From Mytilus trossulus (Eukaryota), in NCBI RefSeq assembly GCF_036588685.1, contig NC_086375.1, forward strand, positions 79,050,001-79,114,000: a stretch of 64,000 nt of DNA, in the 5' to 3' direction. A program made the translations under genes and the position numbers. Under the pieces are notes generated by a model. The model was not told the origin of the DNA and did no database searches. It worked only from the letters and a program-made list of their open reading frames with translations. Each line of letters begins with the position of its first letter. The first letter of the stretch is position 1. Shown piece by piece: positions 288-64,000 of the stretch.

Positions 288-3200
288 CTTGATTAAGACA
301 GCAAATATACCCATAAACATGATGAGACACTGGAAAACATCTGTCCATATTACTGCCTTAATTCCTCCCTTTAAAATATAGATGATTATCAACAGAACAT
401 AACAGTAAAAATGAAATTCATTAATTGAATATAAAGTAATCATTTACTCTATCAACGGGTTTGTATTTGATTCTGTAACACATAGGTCTCAACACGTGAT
501 GGACTGTGGTTTATTATTTACAGTTTACACGAACCATCATTGATACGGTCATTTTCTGTCATTTTATTGTTTATCAGAAGTTAAATTTTTTGAACCTTTT
601 ATGTATTTTTACCCTTATTTGTAAATGGTTTTTTTTTTAATAATCCGTCATACTATTCTTTTGTATTGATGCACCACTAGTGAGTCTTATGCTAACGAAA
701 CGCGCGTACCAAAATACAACACTAGAACCGTTGTGGTGAGTTCTAACTATATATGTTTTGGTGCACAGTTATTTGTATTAAGAAAAATAGAAAATGAAAA
801 GTGATATTTGCTACTTTGCTTACTTACAATAGAGGTATAAATAACTGATGCCAATGCAACACATGTAACAGATACCCAATACGGCATGTCTGTAACTGAA
901 AAATGTTTATAATGTTGACATGAATATCAATAATGTGATCATATTCATAAAGTTCCTGTTTACGAAACTTTGAAGTTTTCGAAAAAAATAAGGATTTTCT
1001 TATCCAAGGCATAGATTACCTTAGCCGTATTTGGCACAACTTTTTGAAATTTTTGGATCCTCAATGCTCTTCAACTTTGCACTTGTTTGGCTTTATAAAT
1101 ATTTTGATATAAGCATCACTGCTGAGTCTTATGTAGACGAAACGCGCGTCTGGTGTACTGAATTATAATCCTGGCACCTTTGATAACTATTATAACAAAT
1201 ATTGATGATGGTATTACCAAATACTTAATAATCAGTGTCTTGTCACTAACCAGATATGACAGATCCATGTGATTGAATCAAAACCGTTGTATTGAAAGGA
1301 CTGTTCAAACTCCTTCAGTATTTTAAGTTTTCTAAAGTGTTAATCTAATTCGTCGCCACATGAATATTATTTATCTTTTAGTATTACGACGAAAGGAATT
1401 AGGTTAGTTTCCTAATTGTGAAATATTGATTTCTGTGTTTCAAAACATCAGCAGCCAATGCAAATGAAGAATACATCTTCAAACTGTTTCGATATTCGAG
1501 AGTTTGCGTGACACTCATTGATTGGATGGATGCTTTTAAGAATGGTATTGAACCATGGGTTGCAAGTGTTTTATTTAAAGATATTGCTTCCGTGTTTTAC
1601 AGAAACCATTATGAAATAGTTCAATTGTTTAATTTGTCTAAACTATAACAAATAATGTTCGAAGTTCACCAAATATTAAGTCATACTTTTAAACTGTTAA
1701 CAAATTAAAGTGAGAGAAGATGAGGATACAGGCACCTTTTAACATTTATTAGAGACATATTCCTTTGCAAAACATGCATAAAAGCAATGACAAAAAAATG
1801 TAGGAGACAGAAATAGAAAAATGTATCTGATTACAAATGTGGATTTATTGATTACATTATGATTTTATTTCATGCTTTGATAACAAAAACAGCATTTGCT
1901 TGTTTACAAATGCTAAAAACCGTACCTGCCTCCAGAGCAGTACCAGGACCAAAAAGAACAATTCCCATATAGAAAACCTGAATGCAAATATAAAATATAA
2001 TTTCACAATTTCTTTCATTTGTTTAGAAACTGTTTTTTCTTATTCTATTTTTAGGTGGGGGATTCTGCTTTATTTTTATTTTGCGAACATAAAACTACTT
2101 TGAATATATTGGTCCCATACAACAACAGCAATTCCTATGGGGAACTCAAGTACTATTAATTACAACATGGACTTCATTTGATAAGAGACTTTTTCAATCA
2201 TTTCAAAGTTCAAGGTTCCAGTGAGGTTGATGAGGGAGGACGATTGATCTCAATACCAAATACGTTGCAATTTCACAATCAAGAAACAGTTGAAAGATAT
2301 GATTGATATGTTTTCGCTGTCTTTAATTCGTAGATATGAAATACTAAACTAGTCGTCGGGTTTATAAAATGGATTTGATCCTTTTCTCGATTTTTAATAT
2401 AAATAACAAACTAATCCCTCTATTGTAGGATTGATTGAAAATAAATTCTGATCAATCATAATGTACGCGATTGATTTATCCATGCAACAATTGTGACAGG
2501 AGAATTTTCGTAGAAAAAATAAGTAGCATTTTAATGTCGGCTTTTGATATTTTACTTCAACCTGTACAGCAATGAACCGCATCATAGAAGGTCATATTAT
2601 TTGTCGATGGTCCAAGACTTGCAATAACGAAAATGAAAGCATGAAATTGCAATGTTTATACATTAAATCACTATATCTAAAAATAATATAAATGATAAAC
2701 ATTTTTTGTTTTGTTAAGTGCCAGTCTGCCTAAGAATCAGGCAGTGATGAAAACATGACTTAAAAAACACACCCAATTTGACAGTGATTTCAGTTCATAA
2801 TATGTAGTTATGCACAAAAATAGCATTCATTTCTGTTTTCTGTTCTGGTAATAGAAGATACAATTTGGTTGAAAAGCACTAGAAATTAACAAATAAGGGG
2901 AGATAACTCTGTGATTTGCTATCGTTCTAACCAATATTCTAACCGAGATATTTGATATTACCAGACACACACAAACGAAAGACTTATAATTTTTAACTCA
3001 GGATGATGGTTAGTATTAAATAGCTTGATTAGCTCGGTGGGTTTTTTTCTGATCATGTTTTGATTTTTACCTTAATTGCCTGATTCTTACAAAGACTGGC
3101 AATTAATCATGTTGTTCATTAATTTCTTTTTTTATTTTCTTTGATTTGTGTATCAGTTATATATTGGTTGATAATTTAGTTTTAGATGCATGATTTTTCT

Positions 3201-20130: not shown

Positions 20131-20440
20131 TAATTTATTTCATGTATTTGACCAATATATCAAAAACTATAATTAAGACTGAATTTTGCATCGCGATGAC
20201 CTTGAGGTAATTCCTATGTATTGCTATCGCATATATTTATATTGTGTAAATTAGTTTTGGATTTGCAACCGATCTATAAACATGATAAATACGCTATCAA
20301 TAAACGAGTGCAAAATAACATTCCTTATCGTTTGATATAAATAAATCTCTTCAATGAATACTGATAAACATATTTTTGTTTACAGCATAAGTTAATGATA
20401 TGGAAATGTTTTGTAGTTAGATATATATTTTTTACTTATA

Positions 20441-20920
20441 TATAAGTACGTCTGAACTAGTGACAACTTTACAACTGATTTTTCCATCGGATCACCAGCA
20501 GTGATGGTGATACATGGCTGTGTACATTCTGTATATACAACTCGTCTAAACATCAACCCGACAATGTTAGATCTGTAAATTTACTTTTGCATTTATTTTT
20601 GTTCATCCCTCACCGGGATTCGAACCCATGCTACTGAAATATCGTGACACCAAATCGCCTGCAATATAACCGTCGGGCTAGACCACACCACCACATGGGC
20701 TTCATAAAAATGAAGCTTTCGGTGGCCCGGTGTTACCTTTCCACGTCAGTTTTAATCTAGCGTCGTACTTCATTTCATGATATATAAGGCATGGAGATGT
20801 TATTTTTACAGATCAACTAAATTATCTATAATAAAGGATCCTACAAATCAATGTAAGATACAGTCACAGAAATAATTTTATTTATAAGTACGTCTGAACT
20901 AGTGTTAACTCTACAACAGA
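20441..20920 (-). mobile_element. tRNA-Leu-derived 442-bp SINE-like element, copy A (about 1.08-mer)
   Basis: A/B boxes on the minus strand (plus strand ggattcgaacc at about 20616-20626); terminal direct repeats at 20441-20478 and 20883-20920; flanked by TA runs. Confidence 0.8.
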
Positions 20921-20936
20921 ATATATATATATATAT

Positions 20937-21414
20937 ACATTGTTGGGTTGATGTTTAGACGAGTTGTATATACATTATGTACACAGCCATGTATCACCAT
21001 CATTGATGGCGATCCGATGGATACATCTGTTGTAGGGTTGTCACTGACTCAGACGTACTTATGAATATAATTATTTTCTGTGACTGTATCTTACATTAAT
21101 TTGTAGGATCCTTTACTATAGATAATTTAGCTGATCTGTAACAATAACATCTTCATGCCTTATATATCATGTACTGTAGTACGCCGCTAGATTAAAACTG
21201 ACGTGGAAAGGTAACATATGGCCACCGAAAGCTCTTTTATATGAGAGCCCAGGTGGTCGTGTGGTCTAGCGGGACGGCTGCAGTGCAGGCGATTTGGTGT
21301 CACGATATCACAGTAGCATGGGTTCGAATCCCGGCGAGGGTAGAACCAAAAATTTGCGAAAGCAAATTTACAGATCTAACATTGTTGGGTTGATGTTTAG
21401 ACGAGTTGTATATA
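20937..21414 (+). mobile_element. tRNA-Leu-derived 442-bp SINE-like element, copy B (about 1.08-mer, different permutation)
   Basis: A box TGGTCGTGTGG at about 21254, B box GGTTCGAATCC at 21321-21331; identical 36-nt direct repeats at 20937-20972 and 21379-21414; (TA)n on both sides. Confidence 0.8.
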
Positions 21415-23224
21415 TATATATATATATATATATAAACGAGTCTAAATTGAAAACTACGTTCAAATATATATATATATAAGTAAAAAACATTGATAATATC
21501 AATGCAAACGTACGAAAAATATATCAAATATATCAATGTATATTAAACACAGTTTCAGGTAAAGAGATATGTGATTTTTTTCTGTGACTAGTGCTTTTGA
21601 CCATCCACAAGAACTTGTTGTCATCCGATGTTCAGTACTTCAGTACTTTGATTAAATTTATGACGTGTTTTGTTCTGTTGTAATACACTACTGTCATAGG
21701 TGAGCGTGAAGGTTACAACGTTTAGACCCGCGCTGCATTTATATGCACCTGTCCGGAGCCTGTTGTTCAGTGGTTGTCGGGGTTCATAGGAGTTTCACGT
21801 TTGTTATATACATTACACCAATGGTTTTCCTGATGAATTGTTTTACACTAGTAAATTTTTGATCCTTTACAGCTTAAAAGTAGGTGTGAGCCAAGTCTCC
21901 GTGGCGTGTTGAGGGTCGATCTTTGATCTATGATTGTTAACTTTTATACATTTTGACTTAGATGAAGAGTTGTCTCATTGGCACTCATGCCACGTCGCTT
22001 TGTTTAAACTAAAAGTTTTATTACTAAAGTACTTGCGTTTGGCTTTGAATTTTTGTATGGGGTGTATAAATTCCATGTTTTTGTGCTTTGTATCTATCCG
22101 ATGCGTTGAGCTTTTTTCAACTGATCTTCATAGTTTGTTCTTCTATTTTACTGTTACACAACTGTCCTACAATGTGGGAAGTGTTTGGTCCAGAAAACAT
22201 GTTTAACCTCGTCACATTCTCTATGTGCATGTCCAAAGTCTGTCTATAATGCAGTTGTTGTCGTTTCAACGGTTACATTATAGTTGTTTATATATTAATA
22301 AACCAGGCCATTTGTTTTCCCAATTTATTTACCCTAATTTGTCATCTGGGCCCTGTCCGTCATGGGTTTTGCTCATTGCTGAATGACTTCGGTGACCAAT
22401 GTTTGATAACTTCTACCATCACAGTTTTTATGAGAATACTTAGACAGTAGGCTCATTAGATATACTCATTGGAAAAATGTATGCCCTATCTGTAATTGAG
22501 GTTGTCATTGGTTCATGTCTGTCATGTTAGTTTTTCGTAAATTATTAAAGGATTAAACACGTTTGTTCTATATAGGTTATCTATGTGTTTCTTTTGTAGG
22601 CTACTGACAAACCGTGACATCCCGAGCTTCGATGTAAGAAAATAGTACAAAATTGAATCCAGTGTATATTTGTTATTCTCGTCGGATTATGTCTAATGCT
22701 TAGTTCGTTTCTGTATGCGTTACATGTTTTAAATGTTGTGTCGTTATTCTCCTCTTATATTTAATGCGTTTTCCCTCAGTTTTAGTTTGCTAACTCGATT
22801 TTGTTTTTGTCCATCGATTTACGAGTTTTGAACAGCGGTATACTACTGTTGCCTTTATTTGAACATTTGCCCGTTGGTGTTATTTCTCATGTTTAAATAA
22901 ATGTAGTTTTATATTAATAATAATGTGAACAGACTTTCTTTGGTATAGACAGTTGTCTCATTAGCAATCGAATGGTATATATTCATTTTTGTAAATTTTT
23001 GTAAAAAAGATAACTATTTGTCATGAAAAGAAAACAGTTTAAGCAACTATTTGTTTTTCTGTGGAAAACTCTTTTAAATTATTTTATTGTTCATGTAAAG
23101 GAAAGGTTAATGCCTACTAAAGAACAAGTCAGCATGCACTTTCGAAACACCATGTTAATATTGAACCCGTTAAATGATCACTTTTGAATATCATGCCATT
23201 TCAATGGCAAACCAACCAATAAAC

Positions 23225-26200
23225 TCAAGCAGTAATGAATTCATACAATGGCATTCTGTGATCTTCTTCATCTAGTCCATAGATAACAATCCTTTCACCC
23301 ATGTTTGGCGTTTCAAATGTAAAATCCCAATATTTTTTGCCAATTCTTTTGAATTTGTGCTTTCTTACCATCACGGCAATCATATTTTCACATGTTATCT
23401 TTATTGTTATGTTCTTATTACATGGCAAGATTTGGCTGAGAGGCTGAATCAAGTGGCATTTTAATTCTCTAGCATGGCGCAGAGTTCTAGGATATGGATA
23501 ACAAGGTTTGGACGGACGTACGCAGTTTATCAAGCAATTGATAGCCTCCCTATAGTTTCCCTTATCATTTTTGAAAGACAGTGTAAGTTTATAGTATCCA
23601 CTTTTAGGAAATTTAACATTCACTACCATTGATTTTGGAATTGCCTGTATCATAACAAAATCGTCCATGTTCGGTATTTCTCCATGTGAATATGTCAGTC
23701 TTGCTGTAACATCGACGTCGTAATCGACTGGAATTAAAAGGTCAATGAACCCGTCATGTACTTCATAGAATGGTCGTATGTCGGCACCTTTACTAATTCC
23801 AAAGTCGAGATATCCATGAACCGGGCCATAATACCCATAGTACTCTGGATAAGGATCAAGTCGGCGCTCTATTTCTCTACACCGTACAAAATATTCATTA
23901 ATCAAACTGAGTACTTTGTTGTCTGAAGATGTAGTTGCGAATAATTTAACGCTATAGCCGCCAACTTTTGGAGGACGAATTATGGCCTTGAACGCATTGT
24001 CATATGGACCGTTTAGTACAATAGCATGATGTTGCAGCATATTACCATCAATGTCCATCAAATAAACTGACGTGTCACATAATTTGACAAGGTCTGTTTT
24101 GAAAATTACAACTAATTCCTTGGTACAGTCAATTACTGCAGACTTGTGGCTTTCATACTCAATACCCCATTCTAAAGATTTATTTGTTGGTTTTATGTTC
24201 AAATTGAATGTTTTCAGATCAATTGATTTTGGAAGCAACTGCCATAATTTGCTTTCATCCACTTCTGGGTCAAAATATGGGAAGTGGGTAAATATCATGG
24301 TTTCTGGGTCCGGTAAAAAGTAGTTTTCATTATAACGCCAAACAAATCTCTTATTTTTATCGATATATCCCGCTCCCCATGTACACTCCATGAAATGCCA
24401 TTCGTCGTCGACATACACAGCATTCCATGTGTGATTAATCGATCCCCTATAATTAAATCTCTTGGCTGGAGTGTGTCCAAAGCCTTTGGCAAATCCCGGA
24501 ATTATTTTGGCATGTATGTTTGAACAGCTGAAATGAAAAAAGTAAGAAATGAAAAAAGTAAGAAATGAAATGTAATTATACATGCCTTTGTATATAGGAG
24601 TATAAGGTAAACAGACTACCCATTTCCTTTTGCAACTTTATCCAACTTATTTATGCAAATGCAATTTTCAATTGATTATTCGTCATAAGCTTTACAGCCA
24701 GTAAAAAATTGACCAAATTCATTATCACAACTGCTTCAACCTTTTAATTAATGTTATTTTCTGCCGAATGAAATAGAAAAAAGAACGATGATGAACTTGA
24801 ATTTAATCAGGCTTACTTGCAGAGTTCAGCGAACAGATTGGCATAGCCTTCACATACTGACACCTTACATTTCATTACAGTCAGTGCATCCACTGGTCGA
24901 CTCCTTCCACTAAAGTGGGACTCCGTATCGTAGCTAAAATAAATGTAGGGTTTTTTAATGTTAAAGAACCAGTACTCACAGTTTAGTTACAATTGTGTTA
25001 ATATATCTTGCTGTAACTGACCCAAGTAGGGAAGATCGTCCGAGATTGTCTTCATATTTCAATTCGGATTTAGTGTTTGGTGTGAATGGAAGACATTTAT
25101 TCTCACAATGTTTTAAGGCTTCATGTTTTCAATGTTTTCTTTTTTAAACTCTTGTTGTCTGTTATATCGTGTTATTTGGTTGTTGTATCGTTAAAGCATT
25201 CCCGCCTCCTTTTTTAAATATCCACATTTCACTGAACTAAAAGCGTATGTTGACATTTGTCAGAAGTTGCTAGGTATCAACTGAAAATATACCTATTTGA
25301 TAACCTAACATTTTTTCTTCCCACCGATTATGCTAAGTGCAGAACGCTTTTTTTGCTGTTGCAAACATTTAAATTGATTACTTACTGTACATTGTTAGTT
25401 ATCCAGATATAAAACGCCCGGATCTTCTCCAAGTCACTGACACATTCTCGTCTCAGATACTGGGCAAGTTTTAAAACAGTTGGTTCTTTATAGTTTGGTG
25501 CCTGTCATAATAAATGTTATGACCCATAATAATAACATGTCATGATGGAATTAGCGGATCGAAAAACTAATTTCTAAAAATTATAATAAAGATTTCAAAC
25601 TACCGAGAAAATTTACCAATGAAAGCTGATTCATTGACAGCATAGTATTCAAGAGGCATATAATGTCGGACTGAAATGTACTTGCATTATTTTCGTAGTA
25701 TTGATATATAATAGAAAAACAAAAATATGGGGTGTCTGTCAATGACACAAAATCAGTAGATGTACACAAAAAAAACACACACACACACAAAAGAAAAGAA
25801 AAGGAACGGCGTTCGTATTGCTGATCTTCATCTCAATGTCACAGTGAGGCATTGTACACGCAGCAAACATATAACATGTATTTTTCTCTTGACTGAATTA
25901 TAACATTTTAGTAAAACAAACTTCAAATACATGATTAGTTTGCTAACAAAGCAGACACACAAGCAAACAACTTCGAAAATTTCTGTTAAAAAGAACAAAC
26001 TGGTATTTTGCATGATACTGGAAATTCCTACAAAATCAGCCTCGAATATTTTTGGTTTGGGAGTGTTGCATTGTCTCGGGAGAATTTAACTTCAAAAGTT
26101 TAAACGGTTCCGTTTTTGCCAAAATATCCCTCGTCGGTTATAATTCTATTAGCAAGACCAACCGTATTATCCAAGAGATTAAAATGTTTAGGGACTATGT

Positions 26201-34069: not shown

Positions 34070-35512
34070 AAAATTGAGAAAGGAAATGGTGAATATGTCA
34101 AAGCGGCAACCACATAGAGCAGACAACAGCCGAAGGCCACCAAGGGGCCTTCAAGGTAGCGATAATTCCTGCACCCGTAGATGTCCTTTAGCTGGCCCCT
34201 AAAAATATGTATACTAGTACAGTGATAATGGACGTCATACTAAACTCCGAATTATACACAAGAAACTAAAATTAAAAAAACATACAAGACTAACAAAGCT
34301 CAGAGACTCCTGACTTGGAACGGGCGCAAAATTGCGGCGGGGTAAAACATGTTTATGATATCTCAACCCTCCCCCTATACCTCTAGCCAATGTAGAATAG
34401 TAAACGCATAACAATACGCACATTAAAATTCAGTTCAAGAGAAGTCCGAGTCCGATGTCAAAAGATGTAACAAAAGAAAATAAATGAAATGACAATAATA
34501 CATAAATAACAACAAACTACTAGCAGTTAACTGACATGTCAGCTCCAAACCTCAATTAAACTGATTGAAAGATTATGTCTTCATCATATGAATATCAAGC
34601 ACAATCCCTCCCGTTAGGGGTTCAGTAGCATACTATCATAAAGTATATGAGAAGAACATAACCCGTGTCATGCCAACAACTGTTTTTTTTTAAATAAATG
34701 TGTTTAGTTCCGATGCAAAGACCCTATAAGTGAATCAATATTAAAGCCAAAATATGCAATATTTAATGACCTGCCAACACTATCGTAACTATATCCCTTA
34801 ATAAGTCTGTTTAAAGGTTTTGTAAGCTTTTGAGGTGAATACTGACATTTTTGTGCTTTGTAAAGAATGTAAAAATAAAACAAAAATGGATGTGAAGTAC
34901 CTGAACGTATAAGATGTCTGCATGTTAAGCTATATTTATTATTATTACCTTATACCGGTGATAAAATTTAATAAATGTTTTGACCAGTTTGTGATATCGA
35001 AAACCCTGGTGTAATAATTTTTCAGTAATACATAAATTTCTCTCGCTAAAATCTAATACGTTGTTTATACATACACGGGCGAATCGTACAAGTTGAGATA
35101 TATAAACACCATAAGATGGTGACAAGAGAACTCACCATCTAAAAGTGGATAATTAACAATAGGAAATGAAAAATCCTCTCTTTTATCATAAATAATTGTA
35201 TTAAGCTTCCCGTTAATGATATAGATATCAAGATCGAGAAAAGGGCAGTGGTCATTGTTAGTATTAGCTTTATTTAAAGTAAGTTCAACAGGATAAATTT
35301 CTTTAGTATACATACCGAAGTCGTCATTATTGAGAGCCAATATATCATCCAAATATCTAAAAGTATTGTTAAATTTTTGTATCAAATGTTGTTTCGATGG
35401 GTCTTTGCTAATTTTAGTCATAAATTGTAACTCATAACGATACAAAAACAGGTCCGCAATAAGTGGTGCACAGTTAGTCCCTATTGGAATTCCATTAACT
35501 TGACGAAATATC
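34070..35512 (-). mobile_element. 5'-truncated Penelope-like retroelement (RT core and thumb, frameshift near 35125, plus 3' region)
   Basis: GIPIGTNCAPLIADLFLY, FRYLDD, PFLDL, YDKREDFSFPIVNYP, SYGVYISQLVRFAR. Copies of the 3' region occur at 61186-61581(+), 11090-11285(+), 5080-5215(-), 32080-32200. Confidence 0.88.
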
Positions 35513-36026
35513 CACACCTTCATTATATGTATGTAGATCCTACAAAATATTGAAGCTGTACCTTCAAAATTGTGGGAGGAGATAGCCAGACAAAATAGGC
35601 AGTGAAAAATAGCGAAACAATTAAAGAATACAGAAATGAAAAACGCCTCATTTATACATCTTGCATCGATGAATAATAAAAATAATGTCCATATTTGAAT
35701 TGACCAGGTCAAAAATATCTTGGAATCGAAATTTTGCATCGTATTCCCTTGGCAGAAAATGAATATGTCAGTTAAAAATATAGTATTGCCAAAAAATGCT
35801 TTATTAACCAAAAACATGGAAACGTTGGCCAGTATTCTGTAACAGTTAATAAAATAAGATTAATATATTTGATAAACCAAAATATTAGTTTTTGCTATAA
35901 AGATATTACCGCTTATTCAACAATTTTAAGTCGATACGTCTTTAAATGTGTGAAAATTGTTGATATTAAGTTTAAATATCTAACGAGTGTCGTTTTTGGA
36001 GCTTGCCTACTGAACGCTGTGGTAGC

Positions 36027-39000
36027 ATGGATAAAGGTACGTTAATTTGACTAAGAAAACTGTGTCATCTATATAATTTTTGTATTTTTTTCATTTTTAG
36101 AAAGTACATATTTTGGTTATATCAGATAAAATTGAGCTTTTTTTATTTCGCTTTCTTTTTTTATGTTTAGTAGTAGTGTAATGACAAAATGCGACTAATT
36201 GCTTCAAGCAAATAAATACTTATATTTTTCCCCATTATATTTCTTTTGCTGTTTTGTTTTACAGTGAAGGAATACTTATTTCATTATATTTTACAGGATA
36301 TCACTTTATTGTTGCCTTTCTGTTTGCTATAGTTGCAGTTCAACAAATTTCTTCAGGTAACATATTTGATAAATATTCTTAGATATAAACATTATTTATA
36401 TATATCTTTGTTTTGATTGAATGTGTGCTATCCATTTTTTTTTATAAAAATGTGACAACGGAATGATATCAAGCCACATTGTTGTTCAGAATTTTACGAA
36501 CCAAACTGGTAACTTAATTGACAACAAATGGAAGTTTTTAACGACCATGACTGGCTATACAGCCCTTGCACGGTTGGCAAAACTTGATTGAAATTATATT
36601 GTACAATGTATATAGATATAGGAAGATGTAGTATGAGTGCCAGTGAGACACCTCTTCAGTATTCAAATGAAAATTGATGATTTAAATTTCAAAACTCTTT
36701 TTAAATGTATATGGTTAACACTCTTTTAAATACAGATCATTCTTTTGTATTGTCTTGTTTATAGTCATCCTGTTTCTAAACAGTTTAGCTGATTGCATAC
36801 ATTGGTTGTATCGTATGAACGTATGCATGGACTTATTTCAACTTTCCTTATCAATACATGTGCAAAAATGGGAATATACATATGACACATACAAACATAA
36901 CTATTTTTTTTTAGCTGAACACCCCTTTAATTTAATGCAATAACTTGTCTAATTAAAAACCTATTTGGTATGGCCGAGTAACAAAATATATATGAAAAAA
37001 AGTTACTATTTTCGAAACATTCACTTTAAACAAAACACAAATATGACTACAATTTGAATAGTTTATATTCACATAGATGAATTATAGAATTTTAAAACAT
37101 TGCATTTGTCTTCTTCTGCTTCGTTAGATTTCAAAAACAATTTTTTAGTTAGAAACTACATGTATTCATAAATTCCAGCTCCCGACAATGAAGGCACTGA
37201 GTTTGTCATTGCGTACATGGAAAACATTGCTGTTGCTTATGAAATAGAATTATTCATCACCACTACGAGAACGAGTATGGTGAATGTCCAGGTCACGGCA
37301 CCAAAATATTCTTCTTCAATTAATGAACAGTTTACAGTTACAGCGGGAACAGTAAAACAGCTATTCTTTAACCCAGGTCTACGTATGTCGGGTTCGAGTT
37401 CTTCCAGCAAAGGTATTCTTGTATCAGCTAGTGATGAAGTTGTTATTTACGGTGTAAATAAAGAGAGATATTCGAACGACGCGTTTCTTGGAGTTCCAAT
37501 AGATGTTTTAGGTACAGAGTATTACGCCGTCACGTGGTACCCAGCATCTCAACAGTGTGAACTAGCGGTTGCAGGTGTCATCGATAACACTGTTGTGTCA
37601 TTTACCTTTCCAGCTAGTATGAGTAGTTCAGTCACGTATGATGGAGTGAGCTATTCAGGAGGAAGCACACTTACCGTAACACTACACCAGTTTGACACAA
37701 TTCAACTGATAAACAGTGATGCAGATTTGACAGGCACGTATATACACTCCGATAAAAAGATAGCAGCTTTTAGTGGAAACAAGAAAACAACAATAGGAAC
37801 TGGGACTAGTTCGGACCACCTCGTAGAACAGCTTACACCAGTAGGCACATGGGGAAAGAATTTCATTACTGTCCCAATACCACTAAGGACAACAGGAGAC
37901 TATTTCAAGTACATTGCTAGTGAGGCGGGAACCACCGTGACTATTTCTGGTGGATTTACTGAAACGTTTACGTTAGCTAACGCCGGTGACTTTGAGGAAA
38001 GACTTGTTCCGTCCACTGCTTATTGTTATGTTTCAGCTGACAAAGCTATTAAAGTTGTCCAATTCTGTCTCAGTCAACAATCGAGTAACGAGTTATCCGA
38101 CCCAATGATGATGATTATTCCCCCTGTTGAACAGTTTGGTGCCGATTACACGTTTGCTACGCCGAGGTATTCACAGGGTTCATATGATAACTACTTTATG
38201 TTTGTCGTCAAAAGAGCAGAAAAAGATGGATTGCTTGTAGATGGAGCAGCATTTCCCTCAGCCACAGTTTACAATGATATCAATGTTGGCGGAACAGATT
38301 ACGTTGCCGGTTACATTTCTGTATCAGATGGTTCACACACAATTCGCCACCAATCTACAATCTCAATCTTTGGAGGTTACTTATATGGCCAGGCACAATA
38401 TGAAACATACGGGTTTACAACTGGTATGAGACTGGCACCAATAAATACGGTATGTAAAGTATATTTGTATATCATACCATAAGTTTACTATTTCTTTTGC
38501 TTTAGGTGACAACCATTTGAATTGCTGGGGGTTGGGGCAGGAGAGTGTTTGAAATAGATAACCTGATAAAATGACTTACCCCAACACAAAATGAACATGA
38601 ATACTTTGACATATTAAATGCTGGATGTTAATATATACGTTTAATAATTGTAGGAAATATAAAATGTATATGTACAAGCTTTGGAAATAGGGCAAATTCC
38701 AGCTTTCACGATCTTTTCTCTATATATTTCCGCAAATGTACAAATAGTATTTCTATCCTGCAATTTTCAGCCGTTTCTTGTCATAAAAAAGTACTCTAAT
38801 TATTCAAAGACATTGACATAATTAAACACGATCGACTTTATTTGTACAGGTATAAATCATTTATAAAGCAATAGTTTATTAAATCTTCTTATTTTGATAA
38901 TTGGCTGATCGCAGGATAGATGAATAAACGAGCGGCAAAACTGTGAAAATGCCTCAAAATATATATGAAACTCCCACATGGTGAAAACAGATGTTCCGTC

Positions 39001-42000: not shown

Positions 42001-44720
42001 GATATTCAAAAAGCGGTAACACTCTTAAAACTAATCCAAAAGGTTCTAAATTTACTGTGTGTTCTTTTCATATCTAAAGCGTTGATTAGAAACGAAAATA
42101 AAAAAAATATTTTTTTTTGCATTTTTTGAGATTTCAAAAAAACACTTTTTTCCCCAAAAATTAGAAAAAAACAATATTTCAACCCATTAATAACAACATG
42201 ACCATAACTTGATTAGCATATTGAATATTTTTAAACAAATTTTAAATTTTATTAAGTACTTAGATAATTATGTGTCGATTTTTTATTCAACTTTCCGCAA
42301 ACCTAATTTACACCCGATGACCGTTTACACAGAATTTAGATACTTTCCGACAAGTTTTGATTTTCATTATCACATGTACATACATTGCAAATAAAAGCTT
42401 TTTAAAATATTGTATCTCATTTTGTTTTATATTTAATACTTTTTGATAAATTTTATTACAAAGTCGTGTATCGTTTCTTTTGTTGACTAGTATATTAAGA
42501 ACTTAGAAAAGTAAAGTAATAAAAATTACCCTTTTTATCAGTTTTGTAAATCGATTACCCTTTGTTAATTTTACTAGTTGATGGAGCCTGGTCACAGTGG
42601 GGTAACTTTGGTCAGTGTTCAGTGACTTGTGGAGGTGGACAATATACAAGATCCAGAACTTGTTCTGATCCTTATCCACAAAATGGTGGATTGTCATGTT
42701 CAGGAGATTCAAGCGAGTTTACTGATTGCAATACACAGGCATGTCCAACGGCATCATCTGGAACATATGTACAGGTATAAATTGAAACTTGTCAAATTGG
42801 TCTAAAAAATGAAGAACTCAAGTTGATGCTGTTTCAAACGTTCAAGTCTTTAAAGGCACACTGTTGTGAATATAATTTTGGTGATCCGACTTAGTTCAAT
42901 GTGATTTTGATATTAATTGATTTTAAATAAAATCTGATCGAATTAATTTTTTGACATTATTTAAAAGTTACCTCTTGGAATCTTATGTTTCGACAGTGCA
43001 TATCAATGTTGACTTTCTGTTAAAATTGCCATGGAAAAAAATCAATGAAAGTTCGTTTATATATCGTATCCTCTTAAGTTTCAAGTTTCTCCCTTTAATA
43101 AAATCAAAACCAATATAAAAATATTAAATATAAAATTTACAATGCATTGTTCATGACACATATACGAATGGGTTTCTGGTGGATGACCCATGGATTCAGT
43201 ATGGTTATATACATAACTCCGTTGTTTATCAAAAATCGGTAACGGTTTGAATATCATAATGTAACTAATAAATATTTTTACCGGATTAAAGCTATTTTTT
43301 GTAATTTGAATAATTGTATCTAGCATGACTTTTTTCTTTCTTAAAAGTTGTGTCCTTCTGGTTGGTTTACCTGTGCTACTGGTTCCTCTAACTGTATCGA
43401 GGATGGTTTTAAATGTGATTGCATGGATGACTGTGGTGACGCAAGTGATGAAACTGAAAACTACGCTGGGTGTTCTCCTCAGCAACTCGCCGTCTGTACG
43501 GCTAAAAGTTCATCTACACGAAGTAAGTATCCATCTGACTGAGGATTACACCAGCACCTCGCCGTCTGTAGGGCTAAAAGTTCTTCTACCCGCCGTAAGT
43601 ATCCATCTGACTGAGGATTACACTGGATGTTCTCCTCAGCACCTCGCCGTCTGTACGGCTAAAAGTTCTTCTACCCGCCGTAAGTACCATCTGACTGAGG
43701 ATTACACTGGATGTTCTCCTCGGCACCTCGCCGTCTGTACGGCCTAAAGTTCTTCTACCCGCCGTAAGTATCCATCTGACTGAGGATTACACTGGATGTT
43801 CTCCTCGGCACCTCGCCGTCTGTACGGCCTAAATTTCTTCTACCCGCCGTAAGTATCCATCTGACTGAGGATTACACTGGATGTTCTCCTCAGCCCCTCG
43901 CCGTTACTATGTTTGGCTCAAAATGCTTTTATACTTATTAAGTATCTATCTGACTGAGAATTAGAGCACCTCGCCTTTTGTGCTTCCGCACATCGGAATT
44001 ATCTATATTATATGACTGGAAAATATAAGCGAAAAGCACCAAAAAAACATATAAACTCATTTATAAACGCCATGACAAATTAAACGAAAAACCGAAAGAC
44101 ACATACCATTACACAAAATACAACATAGAAAACCAAAGACTGTCTGAACAACACAAACCCCACAAAGAATAAGGGGTGATTACAAGTGCTCCGGAAGGTA
44201 AGCAGAACCTACTCCACACGAGGCACCCGTAATGTTACTCAGTTTTAACGGCAAATACCTAGCTGGAGCCTGGTATTGCGGTGAGCGATTCGTGCTCTTA
44301 TAGGAGTCTCTAGTTTGGGATACCAAATTGTGATATAAAACACAAGGACAAACATTTTTTTCTTCTAATTCATAGATTGTTCTACATATCACATAATTCA
44401 ATGTATTTTGTTATTGTTTTTGTAACATGTCATTATGTCGCAACGTTTAAATTATCCGCTTGTTTCGAGTTAATTTATATGTAGAGTTCACGATCGCTTT
44501 AGAATTACAGTCAACTCACTATGTGTAAGGCAATATTTAGCCAAGAATATGAGATAGGATGTTTCATTGTTTTAGATATATGCCTGGTTTTTTTTATTTA
44601 AGTAAAATAATAAAAAGTGATTTCCATAATTGTCTTATATTTATTTATTTTTTAGTCATAGCTTCACTCGTCAGCTTTCTAGTAGCCACGCTCGCATGTG
44701 TTATGAAAAACTATCATTAG
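36027..44720 (+). CDS. Secreted/GPI-anchored mosaic protein: signal peptide, IgGFc-binding N-terminal domain, 2 acidic DxDxDG (MopE-like) motifs, 4 TSP1, LDLa, hydrophobic tail; 819 aa
   Basis: Exons 36027-36036, 36297-36356, 37179-38449, 39209-39299, 39746-39796, 40382-40573, 40843-41013, 41195-41371, 42578-42774, 43348-43522, 44656-44720 (2460 nt, all phases consistent). Motifs: DNEGTEF..DHLVEQL..DPMMMIIPPVEQF..YETYGF (FCGBP-N); WxxW..CSVTC..RTRxC (TSP1); CDCMDDCGDASDE (LDLa). Confidence 0.9.
40095..40197. repeat. Short palindromic element in an intron
   Basis: aaaatattcaacgagtgaccgaacaacac...gtgttgttcggtcacgagttgaatatttt. Confidence 0.6.
41615..42492. mobile_element. Tc1/mariner-type MITE, about 880 bp
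   Basis: TIR TACTAGTCAACAAAAGAAACGATACA / TGTATCGTTTCTTTTGTTGACTAGTA flanked by TA on both sides. Confidence 0.85.
43453..43975 (+). repeat. 84-85-bp tandem repeat built from the LDLa exon end plus its splice donor
   Basis: GTAAGT at 43523, 43595, 43680, 43764, 43849; each unit copies tgttctcctcagca.ctcgccgtctgtacggctaaaagttc. Confidence 0.92.
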
Positions 44721-45100
44721 TGATCCACAACTTCACCAGCACACTACAACGAGTGATCCACAACTTCACCAGAACACTACAACGAGTGATCCACAACTTC
44801 ACCAGCACACTACAACGAGTGATCCACAACTTCACCAGCACACTACAACTAGTGATCCACAACTTCACCAGCGCACTACAACGAGTGATCCACAACTTCA
44901 CCAGCACACTACAACGAGTGATCCACAACTTCACCAGCACACTACAACGAGTGATCCACAACTTCACCAGAACACTACAACGAGTGTTCAACAACTTCTC
45001 CAGCACACTACAACGAGTGATCCACAACTTCACCAGCACACTACAACGAGAGATTCACAACTTCACCAGCACACTTCAACTAGTGATCCACAACTTCACT
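44719..45100 (+). repeat. 33-bp minisatellite (about 11 units) beginning at the stop codon, in the 3' UTR
   Basis: Unit agtgatccacaacttcaccagcacactacaacg. Confidence 0.95.
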
Positions 45101-47644: not shown

Positions 47645-50522
47645 TTTTGTCGAGCCTGCGACGGACTTGTGTCGTAGAGAGCTCGACATAGGGTTAGTGA
47701 TCCGGCGGCGGCGTTAACAAACTTCTTAAAAGTTTTATATTTTAGAAGGTGTAAGAAAAGAGGGACAAAAGATACCAAAGGGACTGTCAAACTCATAAAT
47801 CGAAAATAAACTGACAACGCCATGGCTAAAAATGAAAAAGACAAACAGACAAACAATAGTACACATGACACAACATAAAAAGCTAAAGAATAAACAAAAC
47901 GAACCCCAAGTCCTGGATGTTTCATACTTTGTAAATAGATGCCTTATATTACGAAGTTTCTGTGTGTCACATGTTCATTGTCCTTGACCCCATTTACATG
48001 GTTCAGTGACTAATTGAAAAAAAGTTAAGTTTTTTTTGTATTGTAATTTCCCTCCATTTATGAGTAATAGGATAACTATCTTTAGTATTGCGGACCTTGC
48101 AAGGTCTTCATGTCCGTCAGACAGTTTTCTCCAGACCTTGACTTCATTCATTTTAGTGAACAAGGTTTATTTTTTGTGCAGGTCAAGTCAAATTAATATT
48201 ATAAGCAATATGTCTAGTATATTTTGTGTATGGTGTACATGTCCAACTGACAGGTGTCGTCTGACCTTGACCTCATTTTCATGGTTAAGTGGTTATACAT
48301 GTTTGTTTTTGCCAGTTTTGGTCAATTTTTAGCTCACCTGGCCCGAAGGGCCAAGCGAGCTTTTCTCATCACTTGGCGTCCGGCGTCCGGCGTCGTCCGT
48401 CGTCCGTCGTCGTTAACTTTTACAAAAATCTTCTCCTCTGAAACTGTTGGGCCAAATTAAGCCAAACTTGGCCATAATCATCATTGGGGTATCTAGTTTG
48501 TAAATTGTGTGGCGTGACCCCGCCAACCAACCAAGATGGCCGCCACGGCTGAAAATAGAACGTAGGGGTAAAATGCAGTTTTTGGCTTATAACTCAAAAA
48601 GCAAAGCATTTAGAGCAAATCTGACAGGGGAAAATTGTTTATCAGGTCAAGATCTATCTGCCCTGAAATTTTCAGATGAATCAGACAACCCGTTGTTGGG
48701 TTGCTGTCCCTAAATTGGTAATTTTAAGGAAATTTTGCTGTTTTTGGTTATTATCTTGAATATTATTATAGATAGAGATAAACTGTAAACAGCAATAATG
48801 TTCAGCAAAGTAAGATCTACAAATAAGTGAACATGACCGAAATGGTCAGTTGTCCCCTTTAGGAGTTATTGCCCTTTATGGTCAATTTTTAACCATTTTT
48901 CGTAAATCTTAGTAATCTTTTACAAAAATCTTTTCTCTAAAACAACTGGGCCAAATTAAAACAAACTTGGCCACAACTATCATTGGGGTATTTAGTTTAA
49001 AAGATGTGTGGCGTGACCTGGCCAACCAACCAAGATGGTCACCACAGCTAAAAATAGAACATAGGGGTAAAATGCAGTTTTTGGCTTATTACTCAAAAAC
49101 CAAAGCATTTAGAGCAAATCTGACAGGGGAAAATTGTTTATCAGGTCAAGATATATTTGCCCTGAAATTTTCAGATGAATCAGACAATCCGTTGTTGGGT
49201 TGCTGCCCCTGAATTGGCAATTTCAAGGAAATTTTGCTGTTTTTGGTTATTATCTTGAATATTATTATAGAAAGAGATAAACTGTAAACAGCAATAATGT
49301 TCAGCAAAGTAAGATCTACAAATAAGTGAGCATGACCGAAATGGTCAGTTGACCCCTTTAGGAGTTATTGCCCTTTATAGTCAATTTTTAACAATTTTTT
49401 GTAAATCTTAGTTATCTTTTACAAAAATCTTCTCTGAAACTACTGGGCCAAGTTAATTATAGATAGAGATAATTGTAAGCAGCTAGAATGTTCAGTAAAG
49501 TAAGATGAACAAATTGTAAGCAGCTAGAATGTTCAGTAAAGTAAGATGAACAAACACATCACCATCACCAAAACACAATTTTGCCATGAATCCATCTGCG
49601 TCCTTTGTTTAATATTCACAAAACCAAGGTGAGCGACACAGGCTCTTTAGAGCCTCTAGTTCTTATACTAAGTGTATGAGATATGTCTACTGTATTTGGT
49701 GTAAGGAATGATTGTATGATGTGCATGTACAACTGGCAGGTGTTATTTTACCTTGACCTCATTTTCATGGTTCAGTGGTTATATACTATAAGAAAAATGT
49801 CAACTATATTTGGTATATGGGACAATTTTATAATGTACATGTCGGTCTCGCCGGTTTTATTTGACTTTGGCCTCATTTTCACAGTTCATTTGCTAAGTAT
49901 TATTTTTTTTATTAGTTTTTCTGCTATAAGTAATAGGTCAACTATTTTTGTAGCATGGAAGGATTGTAAGCTGTATATGTCTTTCATGGTAAAGTGTGTT
50001 TCTTAGATACTATAAGCAATAGGTCAACTATGATGAATGCATAGATTAATTGTAACGTGTGTATGTCTGACTGGCATAGATCATCTGACCATCACCTCAT
50101 TTTGGTGGTTCATTGTTCGATGTTACATTTTCATGGTTAAGTTTGTTTCTTAGATACTATAAGTAACATGTCAACTATGTTAAATGCATAGATTAATTGT
50201 AAGGTGTATATGTCTGCCTGGTATGGTTCATCTGACCTTGACCTCATTTTGTAGGTTCATTGGTCAATGTTTAGTTTTCTTGGTTAAGTCTGTTTCTTAG
50301 AAACTACAAGCAATTGCATGTCAACTATATTTAGTGTTTTAAATGATTGTCAGGTGTACATGTATTTCTCGTTTGGTGTATCTGATCTTAGCCTCATTTT
50401 CGTGGATCATGTTAAGATAGTTTTAGTAAAGCTTTAATTCATATTTAAGGTTATGAACATAATATTTATGGTTAGTAAAGAAGGCCGTGGAGACATTCCA
50501 GCGTGTGTATTTTGCATTCTTG
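47645..50522 (+). mobile_element. Outer HINE-type element with degenerate repeats of about 120 bp, interrupted by nested insertions
   Basis: 5' ttttgtcgagcc..gctcgaca plus a (ggc)n tract; repeated ctgaccttgacctcattttcatggttca; 3' ggagacattccagcgtgtg..cttg. Contains a retroelement 3' fragment (47757-47905) and the inner HINE. Confidence 0.55.
48327..49661 (+). mobile_element. Helentron-associated HINE, nested, with about 2.3 central repeats of about 500 bp
   Basis: 5' TTTTAGCTCACCTGGCCCgaaGGGCCA, (cgtc)n microsatellite, tandem core, 3' AGGTGAGCG plus hairpin AGGCTCtttaGAGCCT then CTAGTT. Confidence 0.85.
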
Positions 50523-63194: not shown

Positions 63195-64000
63195 TTTTTT
63201 TTTGTAATATATATTTTATTATTTTCATATCATTTTCAAATCTCATCTACAAATAAAGATGCACAAACAAATTATTCTGCTATAAATCCTAAACATATAG
63301 TTAACCATACTTGTTACAAATTATAAAATACAAAGTCAGTAATAGATTACAGAGTACATCTGCATTGAGCTCTATTTCTTAATAATATTATCAATGCTTG
63401 ACCATTTTTCTTTTAATCTTATTGCTTTACTGGTAGAGCACAAATTCGTAGAGACCATGTCAACCCTATAATAATATTTAATCCATTCAATTGCTTCAGC
63501 AACAGATGGGACTGTAAATCTAACTCTACATAAATAAACATATCTTTTCAATATCAGAATACATGTATTAAGAATATCTTTAAATAGATGATGTTTAACA
63601 CCCAAGATTATACTTGATAAGGTTGGGAGAAAGCTTACATTACATACATCTTCTAAATTTTGAAAAAAATTAAGCCAGAATGTTCGAACATAACTACATT
63701 CAAAAAAGAGGTGTATGTATGTTTCTTTAGTTTCGGTACAAAAAGTGCACAGTTCTGTTTCACTATATTTACATTTCATAAGTAAAGTATTTGTTCCTAG
63801 AATTCTATGGAGTAATCTGTATTGAAATGCCCTTAAAGTGGGATCTTCAGTTATAAGTAAAGGAAGACTAAAAAAATAATTCCATTCTTCGGCCACAATA
63901 TCTATTCTCAATTTCATTTTCCATTTCTCTTGTATGCGTGATGGGGTTTCCTTTATTTTATCTAGAAAAAATTTATAAAAATGTTTTGATACTTTATCAA
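63195..64000 (-). mobile_element. 3' end of an L1/Tx1-clade LINE ORF2 (zf-RVT) with 3' UTR and A-rich tail
   Basis: ORF ending at 63372: FQYRLLHRIL.TN...CTFC...ETYIHLFFEC...FW (CCHC zinc knuckle). AATAAA and an A-run lie on the minus strand near 63195-63225. Confidence 0.85.

What the first reader, a model, noticed from the sequence alone, without database searches (positions are those of the whole stretch)
20441..21414. Two circularly permuted 442-bp tRNA-headed elements with terminal redundancy: candidate circular-RNA retroposon without a canonical hammerhead
Seen in sequence: the same unit occurs twice, back to back across a (TA)n tract. Each copy is one 442-bp unit plus 36-38 nt of terminal redundancy, but the two start at different points of the unit. 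Copy A repeats tataagtacgtctgaactagtg; copy B repeats acattgttgggttgatgtttagacgagttgtatata. In both, the 3' end is an internal TATA fused to the genomic TA run, and the tRNA-Leu-like Pol III head lies internally rather than at the 5' end. Established: ordinary SINEs have fixed heads and tails, whereas retrozymes replicate via circular RNA. Inference: an RT (plausibly Penelope-like, abundant here) primes from a (TA)n target on an internal UAUA of a circular or end-joined RNA, copies it once round and overruns by about 36 nt.
Basis: partly seen in the sequence, partly recalled or inferred. Interest (0 to 1): 0.85.

Follow-up and report, generated by a model that had tools for sequence, protein, structure and literature searches.

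The report
Penelope-driven tRNA-headed tandem retroelement
The two 442-bp copies belong to a young, highly transcribed family of thousands of short non-coding jumping elements. These elements carry a tRNA-like promoter and land in (TA)n microsatellites as arrays of variable length, with the insertion signature of Penelope-like retroelements. A circular RNA intermediate is possible but not shown.

Summary
Window 20436-20920 (- strand) and 20937-21417 (+) are each one 442-bp unit plus about 40 nt. They lie head-to-head across (TA)8.

The "constant overrun" idea fails. Across the genome the unit (at least 4,000 copies, 99-100% alike) forms dispersed arrays of 0.1 to about 18 units. The arrays have two fixed 3' ends, unit positions 39 and 133, each of the form YAGAC-N2-6-(TA)n. 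Their 5' ends vary. Many arrays directly abut an inverted array.

These are hallmarks of Penelope-like element (PLE) target-primed reverse transcription at (TA)n. [quoted passage not shown] One of them is fused to a 442 copy.

Stranded RNA-seq shows abundant sense RNA over the whole unit with no discrete ends. No hammerhead or other Rfam ribozyme is present.

5' ends are about 10-fold enriched at the predicted Pol III start of the tRNA-like head. This favours linear head-initiated RNA for at least some events. Circular RNA is neither shown nor excluded.

Verdict: a SINE-like, ribozyme-free, non-autonomous partner of PLEs, and a new variant of the retrozyme / non-autonomous-PLE kind. Other notes from this scan describe PLEs and ribozyme-bearing repeats elsewhere in this genome, but not this family.

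The parts
20436..20920 (-). Copy A: an older sublineage copy of 1.1 units. Its 3' end (site-133 type, ..CAGACGTACTTATATATAA) is at 20436-20441. Its 5' end (unit phase about 90) is at 20920.
   Evidence: About 88% identity to the main family. Almost no RNA reads.
20921..20936 (.). (TA)8 remnant of the target microsatellite between the two 5' ends.
20937..21417 (+). Copy B: 1.09 units of the young main family. Its 5' end is at unit phase 1. Its 3' end (site-39 type, ..TTTAGACGAGTTG + TATA) runs into (TA)n.
   Evidence: (99-100% identical units elsewhere). Covered by sense RNA at depth 900-2400.
21246..21345 (+). tRNA-like head of copy B. The recurrent family 5' end (predicted Pol III start) maps to 21246. 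The A-box-like motif is at 21262-21272 and the B box at 21321-21331.
   Evidence: Sequence. 5'-end enrichment. Not recognised as a tRNA by ARAGORN or Rfam.
20954..20972 (+). Internal copy of 3'-end site 39 (TTTAGAC-N6-TATATA). The same site forms the actual 3' end at 21396-21414.
   Evidence: Genome-wide there are 2,783 ends versus 4,123 read-through copies.
21048..21069 (+). Internal copy of 3'-end site 133 (CTCAGAC-N..-ATATA). A T4 run follows at 21074-21077.
21219..21259 (+). Hairpin whose loop holds the T-run (21235-21238) and the hypervariable unit junction. Its 3' strand is the start of the head.
   Evidence: MFE fold (whole unit z = -5.1). Two compensatory pair changes between copies A and B are read. 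The junction variants are array-specific.
21438..21467 (-). 30-nt 3'-terminal stub of a second tandem-forming family (unit about 575 bp, tail ..CAATTTAGACTCGTT). It lies tail-to-tail with copy B across (TA)n.
   Evidence: (6,288 genomic hits).
20596..20700 (-). tRNA-like head of copy A (B box at 20615-20625 on the - strand).
   Evidence: inverted match I1.

Best explanation
The 442-bp unit is a SINE-like, non-coding, non-autonomous retroelement mobilised by Penelope-like elements (PLEs) of this mollusc-type genome.

Proposed mechanism:
1. Its sense RNA carries a tRNA-derived Pol III-type head.
2. A PLE GIY-YIG nuclease nicks a (TA)n microsatellite.
3. The exposed ..TATA-3' end anneals to one of two internal UAUA sites, each preceded by YAGAC.
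4. The PLE reverse transcriptase copies the RNA for a variable distance over a multi-unit template. This yields arrays of 0.1 to 18 units with fixed 3' ends and truncated 5' ends.
5. A second priming or strand switch often adds an inverted arm copied from the same template.

Shown: the insertion anatomy, the scale, the strand and abundance of the RNA, and PLE copies with the same terminal motif.

Inferred: that the PLE enzyme is the one used, that Pol III drives transcription, and the form of the template. I judge a linear, head-initiated concatemeric RNA somewhat more likely than a circle (roughly 55:35).

The two window copies are independent insertions of different age into one (TA)n tract.
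For: Fixed 3' ends, variable 5' ends. In 65 mapped blocks, 46 end at site 39 and 12 at site 133, while 5' phases spread over the whole unit. Genome-wide there are 2,783 exact site-39 ends on extended (TA)n against 4,123 read-through copies.

Scale and youth. There are 4,088 hits to a strict 27-mer, with units 99-100% identical across chromosomes.

[quoted passage not shown] All of these are seen here.

Inverted arms. The directly abutting arms in L045 (13+3 units) and L064 (2+4 units) are identical (0.0002 and 0.0000 differences). They share lineage variants but start at different phases (10/125 and 21/100). This fits one event from one template and not a fold-back duplication. Arms separated by (TA)n differ as much as random pairs do.

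PLE copies beside the arrays. L039 carries RVT_1 (1e-7) followed by GIY-YIG. L061 carries GIY-YIG (1e-8) with a CX4CxxC linker and two Cys inside the GIY-YIG core. L044 holds a second family. Their 3' ends are ..TTTAGACTGA(TA)n..TATAGACTTT(TA)n about 90 nt further on, and ..TCAGACGTTT(TA)n. These have the same form as both 442 ends, which are also about 94 nt apart.

Motif enrichment. AGAC lies in the last 12 nt of 33 of 232 distinct (TA)n-adjacent tails, against 3-5 of 232 in control windows 24-48 nt further upstream (15 of 232 in the window immediately adjacent).

Chimera. In L061 a 442 copy is fused without (TA)n to a 5'-truncated PLE through a 34-nt snap-back filler.

RNA. In three stranded runs the whole unit is covered at depth 900-2400 (6% of each run read) with about 30:1 strand bias for the tRNA-sense strand. 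Reads cross the T-run/head junction, and no place where molecules begin or end is reported.

5' ends at the head start. There are 49 genomic cases of (TA)4 directly followed by AGCCCAGG.., against 2-9 per phase at neighbouring phases.
Against: - No sequence similarity beyond the short YAGAC-(TA)n motif links the unit to the PLE 3' UTRs (z<3). The partnership therefore rests on anatomy, motif and one chimera, not on a shared tail.
- The PLE copies examined are decayed.
- The head is not recognised as a tRNA by ARAGORN or Rfam. Pol III transcription is inferred from box motifs and 5' ends only.
- RNA depth does not drop at the T4 or T5 runs, so either Pol III reads through them or another polymerase is involved.
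- The loci were sampled from the best full-unit hits, so array lengths are biased upward.
- The library strand convention is assumed, not checked.
Confidence: 0.72

Rival explanations
1. A monomeric circular RNA is the template, and arrays arise by rolling-circle reverse transcription. The circle might form when the ends of a unit-length transcript, held together by the hairpin around the T-run, are ligated.
For: - Units within an array are near-identical (median 0.23%, often 0) against 0.9-1.4% between loci.
- The hypervariable junction variant and the unit length (440, 441 or 442) are uniform within an array.
- RNA spans the junction and shows no discrete ends at depth above 1000.
- The unit folds well (z = -5.1), with a hairpin that would bring the unit ends together.
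- Hammerhead retrozymes of mussels are abundant circRNAs (PMC7229834).
Against: - No ribozyme or other known processing signal is present.
- A circle has no 5' end, yet 5' ends are about 10-fold enriched at the predicted transcription start, including a 6.4-unit array.
- 5' ends are over-represented between that start and the 3' site (31 of 46 against 40% expected, p=1.5e-4). Linear head-initiated RNA predicts this, although RT stalling in the structured head could mimic it.
- The variants fixed within single arrays are genome-wide sublineages, so homogeneous source arrays exist.
- Junction reads cannot tell circles from tandem transcripts.
Confidence: 0.3
2. An ordinary tRNA-derived SINE mobilised by a (TA)n-tailed LINE, with arrays produced afterwards by unequal crossing-over.
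For: - Head with A and B boxes, a length in the SINE range, and a microsatellite tail.
- Tandem-like and palindromic SINE structures are reported in bivalves (PMC11481361).
Against: - No LINE with this tail appeared in about 290 kb of held sequence, while three PLE copies with the motif did.
- Identical inverted arms with unequal phases and lengths are not produced by crossing-over.
- Two alternative 3' sites about 90 nt apart are mirrored in the PLE itself.
Confidence: 0.08
3. A DNA-level repeat: satellite DNA spread by eccDNA reintegration, or carried inside a Helitron/Helentron or MITE.
For: Tandem arrays of a 441-bp unit at many loci. Satellite-like repeats carried by Helentrons are known in oysters (my own knowledge, not checked here).
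Against: - Arrays are not embedded in a common carrier; their flanks are unrelated apart from (TA)n.
- One end is fixed and strand-specific while the other is ragged.
- The fixed end always lies on the strand that is abundantly transcribed.
- Chimeras with 5'-truncated PLE and family-2 RNA-sense sequences exist.
Confidence: 0.04

Closest known systems
Metazoan non-LTR retrozymes (Cervera and de la Pena 2020, PMC7229834; bioRxiv 10.64898/2026.07.22.740005)
   Same: Short non-coding units in dispersed tandem arrays, very high sense-RNA levels, and proposed dependence on PLEs. They occur in mussels.
   Different: Retrozymes are defined by a type I hammerhead that cuts monomers for circularisation. 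This unit has no hammerhead or any Rfam ribozyme. It carries a tRNA-like Pol III-type head, and circularity is unproven.
Non-autonomous PLE derivatives such as the Chlamys-dependent MRC1 (Craig et al. 2021, PMC8557442)
   Same: Pseudo-LTR-like terminal redundancy, multicopy head-to-tail insertions, microsatellite targets, and a 3' end related to the autonomous element.
   Different: Only a 5-nt motif plus (TA)n is shared with the PLE here. The element has its own Pol III-type promoter module. The host is an animal, and the candidate partner has a C-terminal EN.
tRNA-derived SINEs (SINE2) of bivalves (PMC11481361, PMC4758252)
   Same: tRNA-related head with A and B boxes, a few hundred nt long, a simple-repeat tail, and a minimal full-length form of 172 or 266 nt from head start to 3' site.
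   Different: No LINE-derived tail. The insertion anatomy is PLE-like (arrays, inverted arms). The priming sites are internal, so one element can be copied many times round. The library search found no report of a SINE-PLE partnership.
Canonical C-terminal-EN PLEs with a Zn-finger linker (Neptune/Nematis type), and (TA)n-targeting Naiad/Hydra PLEs
   Same: (TA)n target preference, 5' truncation, and tandem/inverted insertions. The candidate partner copies have RT followed by CX4CxxC and then GIY-YIG with internal Cys pairs.
   Different: The 442 unit encodes nothing. I did not determine the clade of the partner by phylogeny.

Membership tests
PLE-mobilised (non-autonomous) element | Insertion preference for a microsatellite, here (TA)n | tested here: met
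   Nearly all 3' ends run into (TA)n, and 25 of 65 5' flanks are TA runs of at least 6 nt. There are 2,783 genomic site-39 ends on extended (TA)n.
PLE-mobilised (non-autonomous) element | High degree of 5' truncation with a defined 3' end | tested here: met
   Two 3' sites account for 58 of 65 blocks, while 5' phases are spread across the unit (chi-square p=0.08 for uniformity over 8 bins).
PLE-mobilised (non-autonomous) element | Partial tandems (pseudo-LTR) or multicopy head-to-tail insertions | tested here: met
   Blocks of 0.1-17.7 units, median 2.1 in the sampled loci.
PLE-mobilised (non-autonomous) element | Inverted 5'-truncated copy directly adjacent at the 5' end | tested here: met
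   Direct - / + abutments in L035, L042, L044, L045, L046, L058, L062 and L064. The arms are identical in L045 and L064.
PLE-mobilised (non-autonomous) element | 3' end similar to that of an autonomous PLE in the same genome | tested here: inconclusive
   Only YAGAC-N2-6-(TA)n and the two-site layout about 90 nt apart are shared. There is no wider similarity.
PLE-mobilised (non-autonomous) element | Mobilisation by the PLE RT/EN | not testable with these tools
   Needs a retrotransposition assay. The L061 chimera is only suggestive.
Non-LTR retrozyme | Type I hammerhead ribozyme in each unit | tested here: not met
   cmscan of 20300-21600 on both strands at E<=10 gives no hammerhead, twister, HDV-like, hatchet, pistol or hairpin match. 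The same holds for four related loci at E<=0.1.
Non-LTR retrozyme | Accumulates as a monomeric circular RNA | not testable with these tools
   Reads span the unit junction and show no discrete ends, but tandem DNA gives the same reads.
Non-LTR retrozyme | Small tandem genomic repeats, highly expressed | tested here: met
   The unit of 441 bp is slightly above the 170-400 bp reported.
tRNA-derived SINE | [quoted passage not shown] | tested here: inconclusive
   The B box is exact and the A box about 9-10 of 11 by eye. ARAGORN and the Rfam tRNA model do not recognise it. 5' ends are enriched about 15 nt upstream of the A box.
tRNA-derived SINE | 3' tail recognised by a LINE partner | tested here: not met
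   No LINE with this tail was found in the held sequence. The tail motif is shared with PLE copies instead.
Satellite DNA / Helitron-borne repeat | Arrays with arbitrary phase at both ends, or common carrier termini | tested here: not met
   The 3' phase is fixed and the flanks are unrelated.

The most novel reading that the evidence does not exclude
A ribozyme-free "retrozyme". A unit-length transcript starts at the tRNA-like head and ends at the T-run just upstream of the next head. The conserved hairpin holds its ends together, and host RNA-repair or tRNA-ligation enzymes close it into a circle. A Penelope-like RT then copies the circle by rolling-circle reverse transcription into (TA)n sites. 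That would be a Pol III- and host-enzyme-based route to a replicating circular RNA retroelement in animals.
Probability: 0.25. Interest if true: 0.85.

Novelty: new variant of a known kind. Interest (0 to 1): 0.62.

Why it matters
PLEs are the least understood major retrotransposon class, and no in vitro system explains their tandem and inverted insertions. This family offers thousands of young, short, easily aligned insertion events. These events expose several rules:
- two alternative internal priming sites marked by YAGAC-(TA)n, mirrored in the PLE's own 3' end;
- inverted arms copied from one template;
- template switches between PLE RNA and passenger RNA.

It would also be, as far as the library searches show, the first SINE-like (Pol III-headed) passenger of a PLE. 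That would link SINEs, retrozymes and dispersed satellite-like arrays in one mechanism. It would also show that a ribozyme is not needed for array-forming PLE passengers. The very abundant sense RNA, whether circular or concatemeric, is directly testable in mussel tissue.

Tried and rejected
- Ribozyme and tRNA searches. Rfam at E<=10 on the region and at E<=0.1 on four related loci gave no ribozyme. The only hits were hairpin/miRNA-like matches caused by TA runs and inverted junctions. ARAGORN found no tRNA.
- Wider homology between PLE 3' UTRs and the unit. Local alignment against shuffles was not significant.
- "Private" array variants as proof of a single-molecule template. The variants turned out to be genome-wide sublineages with 63 and 323 hits, so the test does not separate circles from homogeneous source arrays.
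- Inverted duplication of target flanks as a general signature. It was seen only at L041, L055 and weakly in the window, so it is probably pre-existing palindromes.
- 5'-end phase bias as a test of linear against circular template. The bias is significant but confounded by possible RT stalling in the structured head.
- Window ORFs. None is a PLE. 35065-35817 has a weak RVT_1 match of another RT type, and 63372-63917 matches zf-RVT.
- Supplementary PLE consensus sequences of PMC8557442 are not held.
- After no further genome DNA could be fetched. An intact partner PLE and an unbiased genome-wide end map could therefore not be obtained.
- Protein database searches, structure prediction and complex prediction were not used, because they would not bear on a non-coding element.

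Full report
**1. The observation**

One search finds two direct repeats with spacing 442: 20436-20478 / 20878-20920 (43 nt, 88%) and 20937-20975 / 21379-21417 (39 nt, 97%). It also finds long reverse-complement matches between the two halves.

So there are two copies of one 442-bp unit, each about 1.1 units long. They are in opposite orientation, with their 5' ends (in the tRNA-sense orientation) facing each other across (TA)8 at 20921-20936. Copy A is about 12% diverged from copy B.

ARAGORN calls no tRNA. An Rfam scan of both strands at E<=10 gives only TA-hairpin noise, with no hammerhead, twister, HDV-like or other ribozyme and no tRNA. The "head" consists of an exact B box (21321-21331) and an A-box-like motif (21262-21272).

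**2. The family in the genome**

The window lies on a 94-Mb contig of a 1.30-Gb assembly. The unit (440-442 bp) occurs at many loci on all large contigs, at 99-100% identity to copy B. It forms head-to-tail arrays, which often have a minus-strand block followed directly by a plus-strand block. A strict 27-mer from the body has 4,088 exact hits.

I fetched 37 loci and mapped the unit on them. Of 65 blocks, 46 end at unit position 39 (..TTTAGACGAGTTG followed by TATA) and 12 end at position 133 (..CTCAGACGTACT followed by TATA). In almost all cases the end runs into a (TA)n tract.

The 5' ends are spread over the whole unit. They are preceded either by (TA)n or directly by an inverted copy. Block lengths run from 39 nt to 17.7 units.

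Genome-wide, the site-39 sequence is followed by extended (TA)n 2,783 times and by the next part of the unit 4,123 times. There are therefore thousands of separate insertion ends. One fixed, strand-specific end and one ragged end is the signature of target-primed reverse transcription with 5' truncation. The redundancy of about 40 nt in both window copies is a coincidence.

**3. Which enzyme**

Craig et al. 2021 (PMC8557442) describe the following features for PLEs. Naiad, Hydra and linker-bearing C-terminal-EN clades prefer (TA)n. Copies show strong 5' truncation and partial tandems (pseudo-LTRs). An inverted 5'-truncated copy often sits at the 5' end. Non-autonomous relatives make multicopy head-to-tail insertions. 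Every one of these features is present here.

A motif scan of the held DNA found PLE copies beside three arrays:
- L039 (-) has an RT (RVT_1, 1e-7) followed by a GIY-YIG nuclease.
- L061 (-) has the same nuclease (PF01541, 1e-8), with a CX4CxxC linker and two Cys inside the GIY-YIG core.
- L044 (-) carries a second family.

RT followed by a C-terminal GIY-YIG with both Zn-finger-like motifs fits the canonical Neptune/Nematis type rather than Hydra. I did not build a tree.

The 3' ends of these PLEs are ..TTTAGACTGA(TA)n (L039)..TATAGACTTT(TA)n about 90 nt further on in the same family (L061, L059), and ..TCAGACGTTT(TA)n (L044). The PLE therefore also has two alternative ends about 90 nt apart. 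All of them have the form YAGAC-N2-6-(TA)n, like both ends of the 442 unit and like the tail of a second tandem-forming family.

Among 232 distinct sequences that abut (TA)n in the held DNA, 33 have AGAC in the last 12 nt, against 3-5 in control windows 24-48 nt further upstream (15 in the window immediately adjacent). Beyond this motif there is no significant similarity between the PLE 3' UTRs and the unit.

In L061 a 442 copy (1.06 units) is joined without any (TA)n to a 5'-truncated PLE. The join runs through a 34-nt filler that is an inverted copy of PLE sequence about 180 nt downstream. This is what a template switch from PLE RNA to 442 RNA within one cDNA would leave. Similar fusions of 442 with the second family occur in L043 and L060.

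**4. Inverted arms**

Arms that abut directly can be identical. In L045, 13 and 3 units differ by 0.0002. In L064, 2 and 4 units differ by 0.0000, and both arms carry the same rare lineage variant and the same 440-bp unit length. Yet the two arms start at different phases (10 and 125; 21 and 100).

A fold-back DNA duplication would give mirror-image phases, and unequal crossing-over would not make both arms alike. One event using one template explains it. The target (TA)n is its own reverse complement, so both nicked strands can prime on the same UAUA sites; this last step is inference.

Arms separated by (TA)n, as in the window and in L057, L063 and L067, differ as much as random pairs. They are independent insertions. 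One abutting pair, L058, also differs.

**5. RNA**

Four raw-read RNA runs carrying the same species label as runs that hold this stretch were laid on 20300-21600. In the three stranded runs of one study, copy B is covered along the entire unit at depth about 900-2400, with only about 6% of each run read. The first mate lies on the minus strand about 30 times more often than on the plus strand. By the usual library convention this means the RNA is the plus strand, that is, the tRNA-sense strand. It is the same strand that the fixed 3' ends identify as the template.

Depth does not fall after the T4 run at unit position 141-144. It dips to about 55-65% at the T-run/head junction, where indel variants also hamper mapping. 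Hundreds of reads cross that junction, and no place where many molecules begin or end is reported. Fewer than about 1.5% of reads at the 3' sites run into flanking DNA. Copy A's sublineage is nearly silent.

Most of the RNA is therefore junction-spanning, either concatemeric or circular. With tandem DNA present, these reads cannot tell the two apart.

**6. Linear or circular template**

For a circle:
- Units within an array are much more alike (median 0.23% difference) than units of different loci (0.9-1.4%).
- The hypervariable junction between T-run and head, and hence the unit length, is uniform within arrays but varies among them.
- The unit is well folded (z = -5.1). A hairpin pairs the region upstream of the T-run with the first bases of the head. 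Two compensatory pair changes distinguish copies A and B.

Against a circle, or for linear head-initiated RNA:
- The array-fixed variants are genome-wide sublineages (63 and 323 hits), so homogeneous source arrays exist.
- 5' ends are enriched at AGCCCAGG.., about 15 nt upstream of the A box. This holds in 5-7 of 65 blocks, including a 6.4-unit array.
- Genome-wide there are 49 cases of (TA)4 directly followed by this sequence, against 2-9 per phase at phases 9-15 nt further in.
- 5' ends fall between this start and the 3' site more often than expected (31 of 46 against 40%, p = 1.5e-4). The bias fades in long arrays, as linear templates predict. RT stalling in the structured head could produce a similar bias.

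The minimal full-length forms, from head start to site 39 (172 nt) or to site 133 (266 nt, just before the T4 run), look like an ordinary SINE. I conclude that linear, head-initiated RNAs serve as templates in at least some events. Whether long arrays come from read-through concatemers, repeated template jumps or circles remains open.

**7. Comparison with known elements, and novelty**

The closest known things are the metazoan non-LTR retrozymes. These are tandem 170-400-bp units with a type I hammerhead and very abundant circRNAs in mussels (PMC7229834), and a 2026 preprint argues they are PLE passengers. Also close are the non-autonomous Chlamys elements with multicopy head-to-tail insertions.

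This family fails the defining retrozyme feature, the ribozyme, and instead carries a tRNA-like Pol III-type head. It also fails the SINE criterion of a LINE partner. Searches of the paper library found no description of a SINE-like passenger of PLEs. Tandem-like and palindromic SINE structures in bivalves have been noted without a mechanism (PMC11481361). I rate it a new variant of a known kind.

Notes of this scan on other windows of the genome report Naiad-type PLEs with twister-like folds and hammerhead retrozyme arrays. I found neither motif in this family or in the PLE tails I hold.

**8. Limits**

- The loci were chosen from the best full-unit hits.
- The partner PLE copies are decayed.
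- The PLE clade, Pol III dependence, enzyme usage and RNA topology are all inferred.
- The organism is coded. The genome size and the scan notes suggest a mussel, which I did not verify.

Noticed in passing
window 21438-21467 (- strand); L061 1046-1613; many places in G000: A second tandem-forming (TA)n-targeting family with a unit of about 575 bp and tail ..GAACGTAGTTTTCAATTTAGACTCG. Its tail 25-mer has 6,288 genomic hits at up to one mismatch, in arrays of period about 550-577, again with +/- juxtapositions. It has no obvious tRNA-like boxes and no Rfam ribozyme.
   Followed up: partly
L039 8470-6832 (-), L061 3068-2257 (-), L059 about 1652-1770 (+), L044 3934-2500 (-): Decayed C-terminal-EN Penelope-like elements inserted in (TA)n. 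One family uses two alternative 3' ends about 90 nt apart. No hammerhead or twister was found in the held 3' UTRs at E<=0.1.
   Followed up: partly
L061 3570-2257 (- strand): A chimeric insertion. A 442 copy of 1.06 units is joined to a 5'-truncated PLE through a 34-nt inverted snap-back of PLE sequence, with (TA)n only at the outer ends.
   Followed up: yes
window 21219-21259: A hairpin pairs the region upstream of the T-run with the start of the tRNA-like head. Its loop is the most variable spot of the unit (T-run length, A/T changes). Copies A and B differ by two compensatory pairs. This corresponds to the scan's other note on 21183-21273.
   Followed up: partly
L041 about 1774/2811; L055 about 724/1380; window 20425-20457 / 21458-21490: At a few loci the flanks on the two sides of the insertion are reverse complements of each other (25 to more than 70 nt). 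The (TA)n target therefore sat in the centre of a palindrome. This is not a general feature (3 of about 45 clusters).
   Followed up: partly
L044 1442-1561; L059 1871-1977: Head-to-head junctions form long perfect hairpins that score against plant and animal miRNA precursor models (up to 67 bits, below gathering). They are possible sources of small RNAs.
   Followed up: no
L044 600-664 (+): A sub-threshold SECIS_1 match (31.7 bits against 35 gathering, E=0.008). It lies near PLE-rich sequence in a genome where scan notes mention selenoprotein-encoding PLEs.
   Followed up: no
one search run table: The 481-nt stretch is held at 0.83-0.92 of its sampled words in runs carrying four different organism codes, and in a marine and a fish-gut metatranscriptome. 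The young family is therefore shared almost unchanged among several labelled taxa.
   Followed up: no
window 35065-35817 (-), 63372-63917 (-), 23225-24583 (-), 37217-38482 (+): Other content of the window: an RT-like ORF of a different type (weak RVT_1), a zf-RVT fragment, a KY-like Ig-domain ORF and an IgGFc-binding-protein-like ORF.
   Followed up: no
window 48417-49456; 58859-60148; 44719-45099: Unrelated tandem repeats: a 499-bp unit x2.1, a 30-bp minisatellite x43 and a 33-bp repeat x11.5.
   Followed up: no
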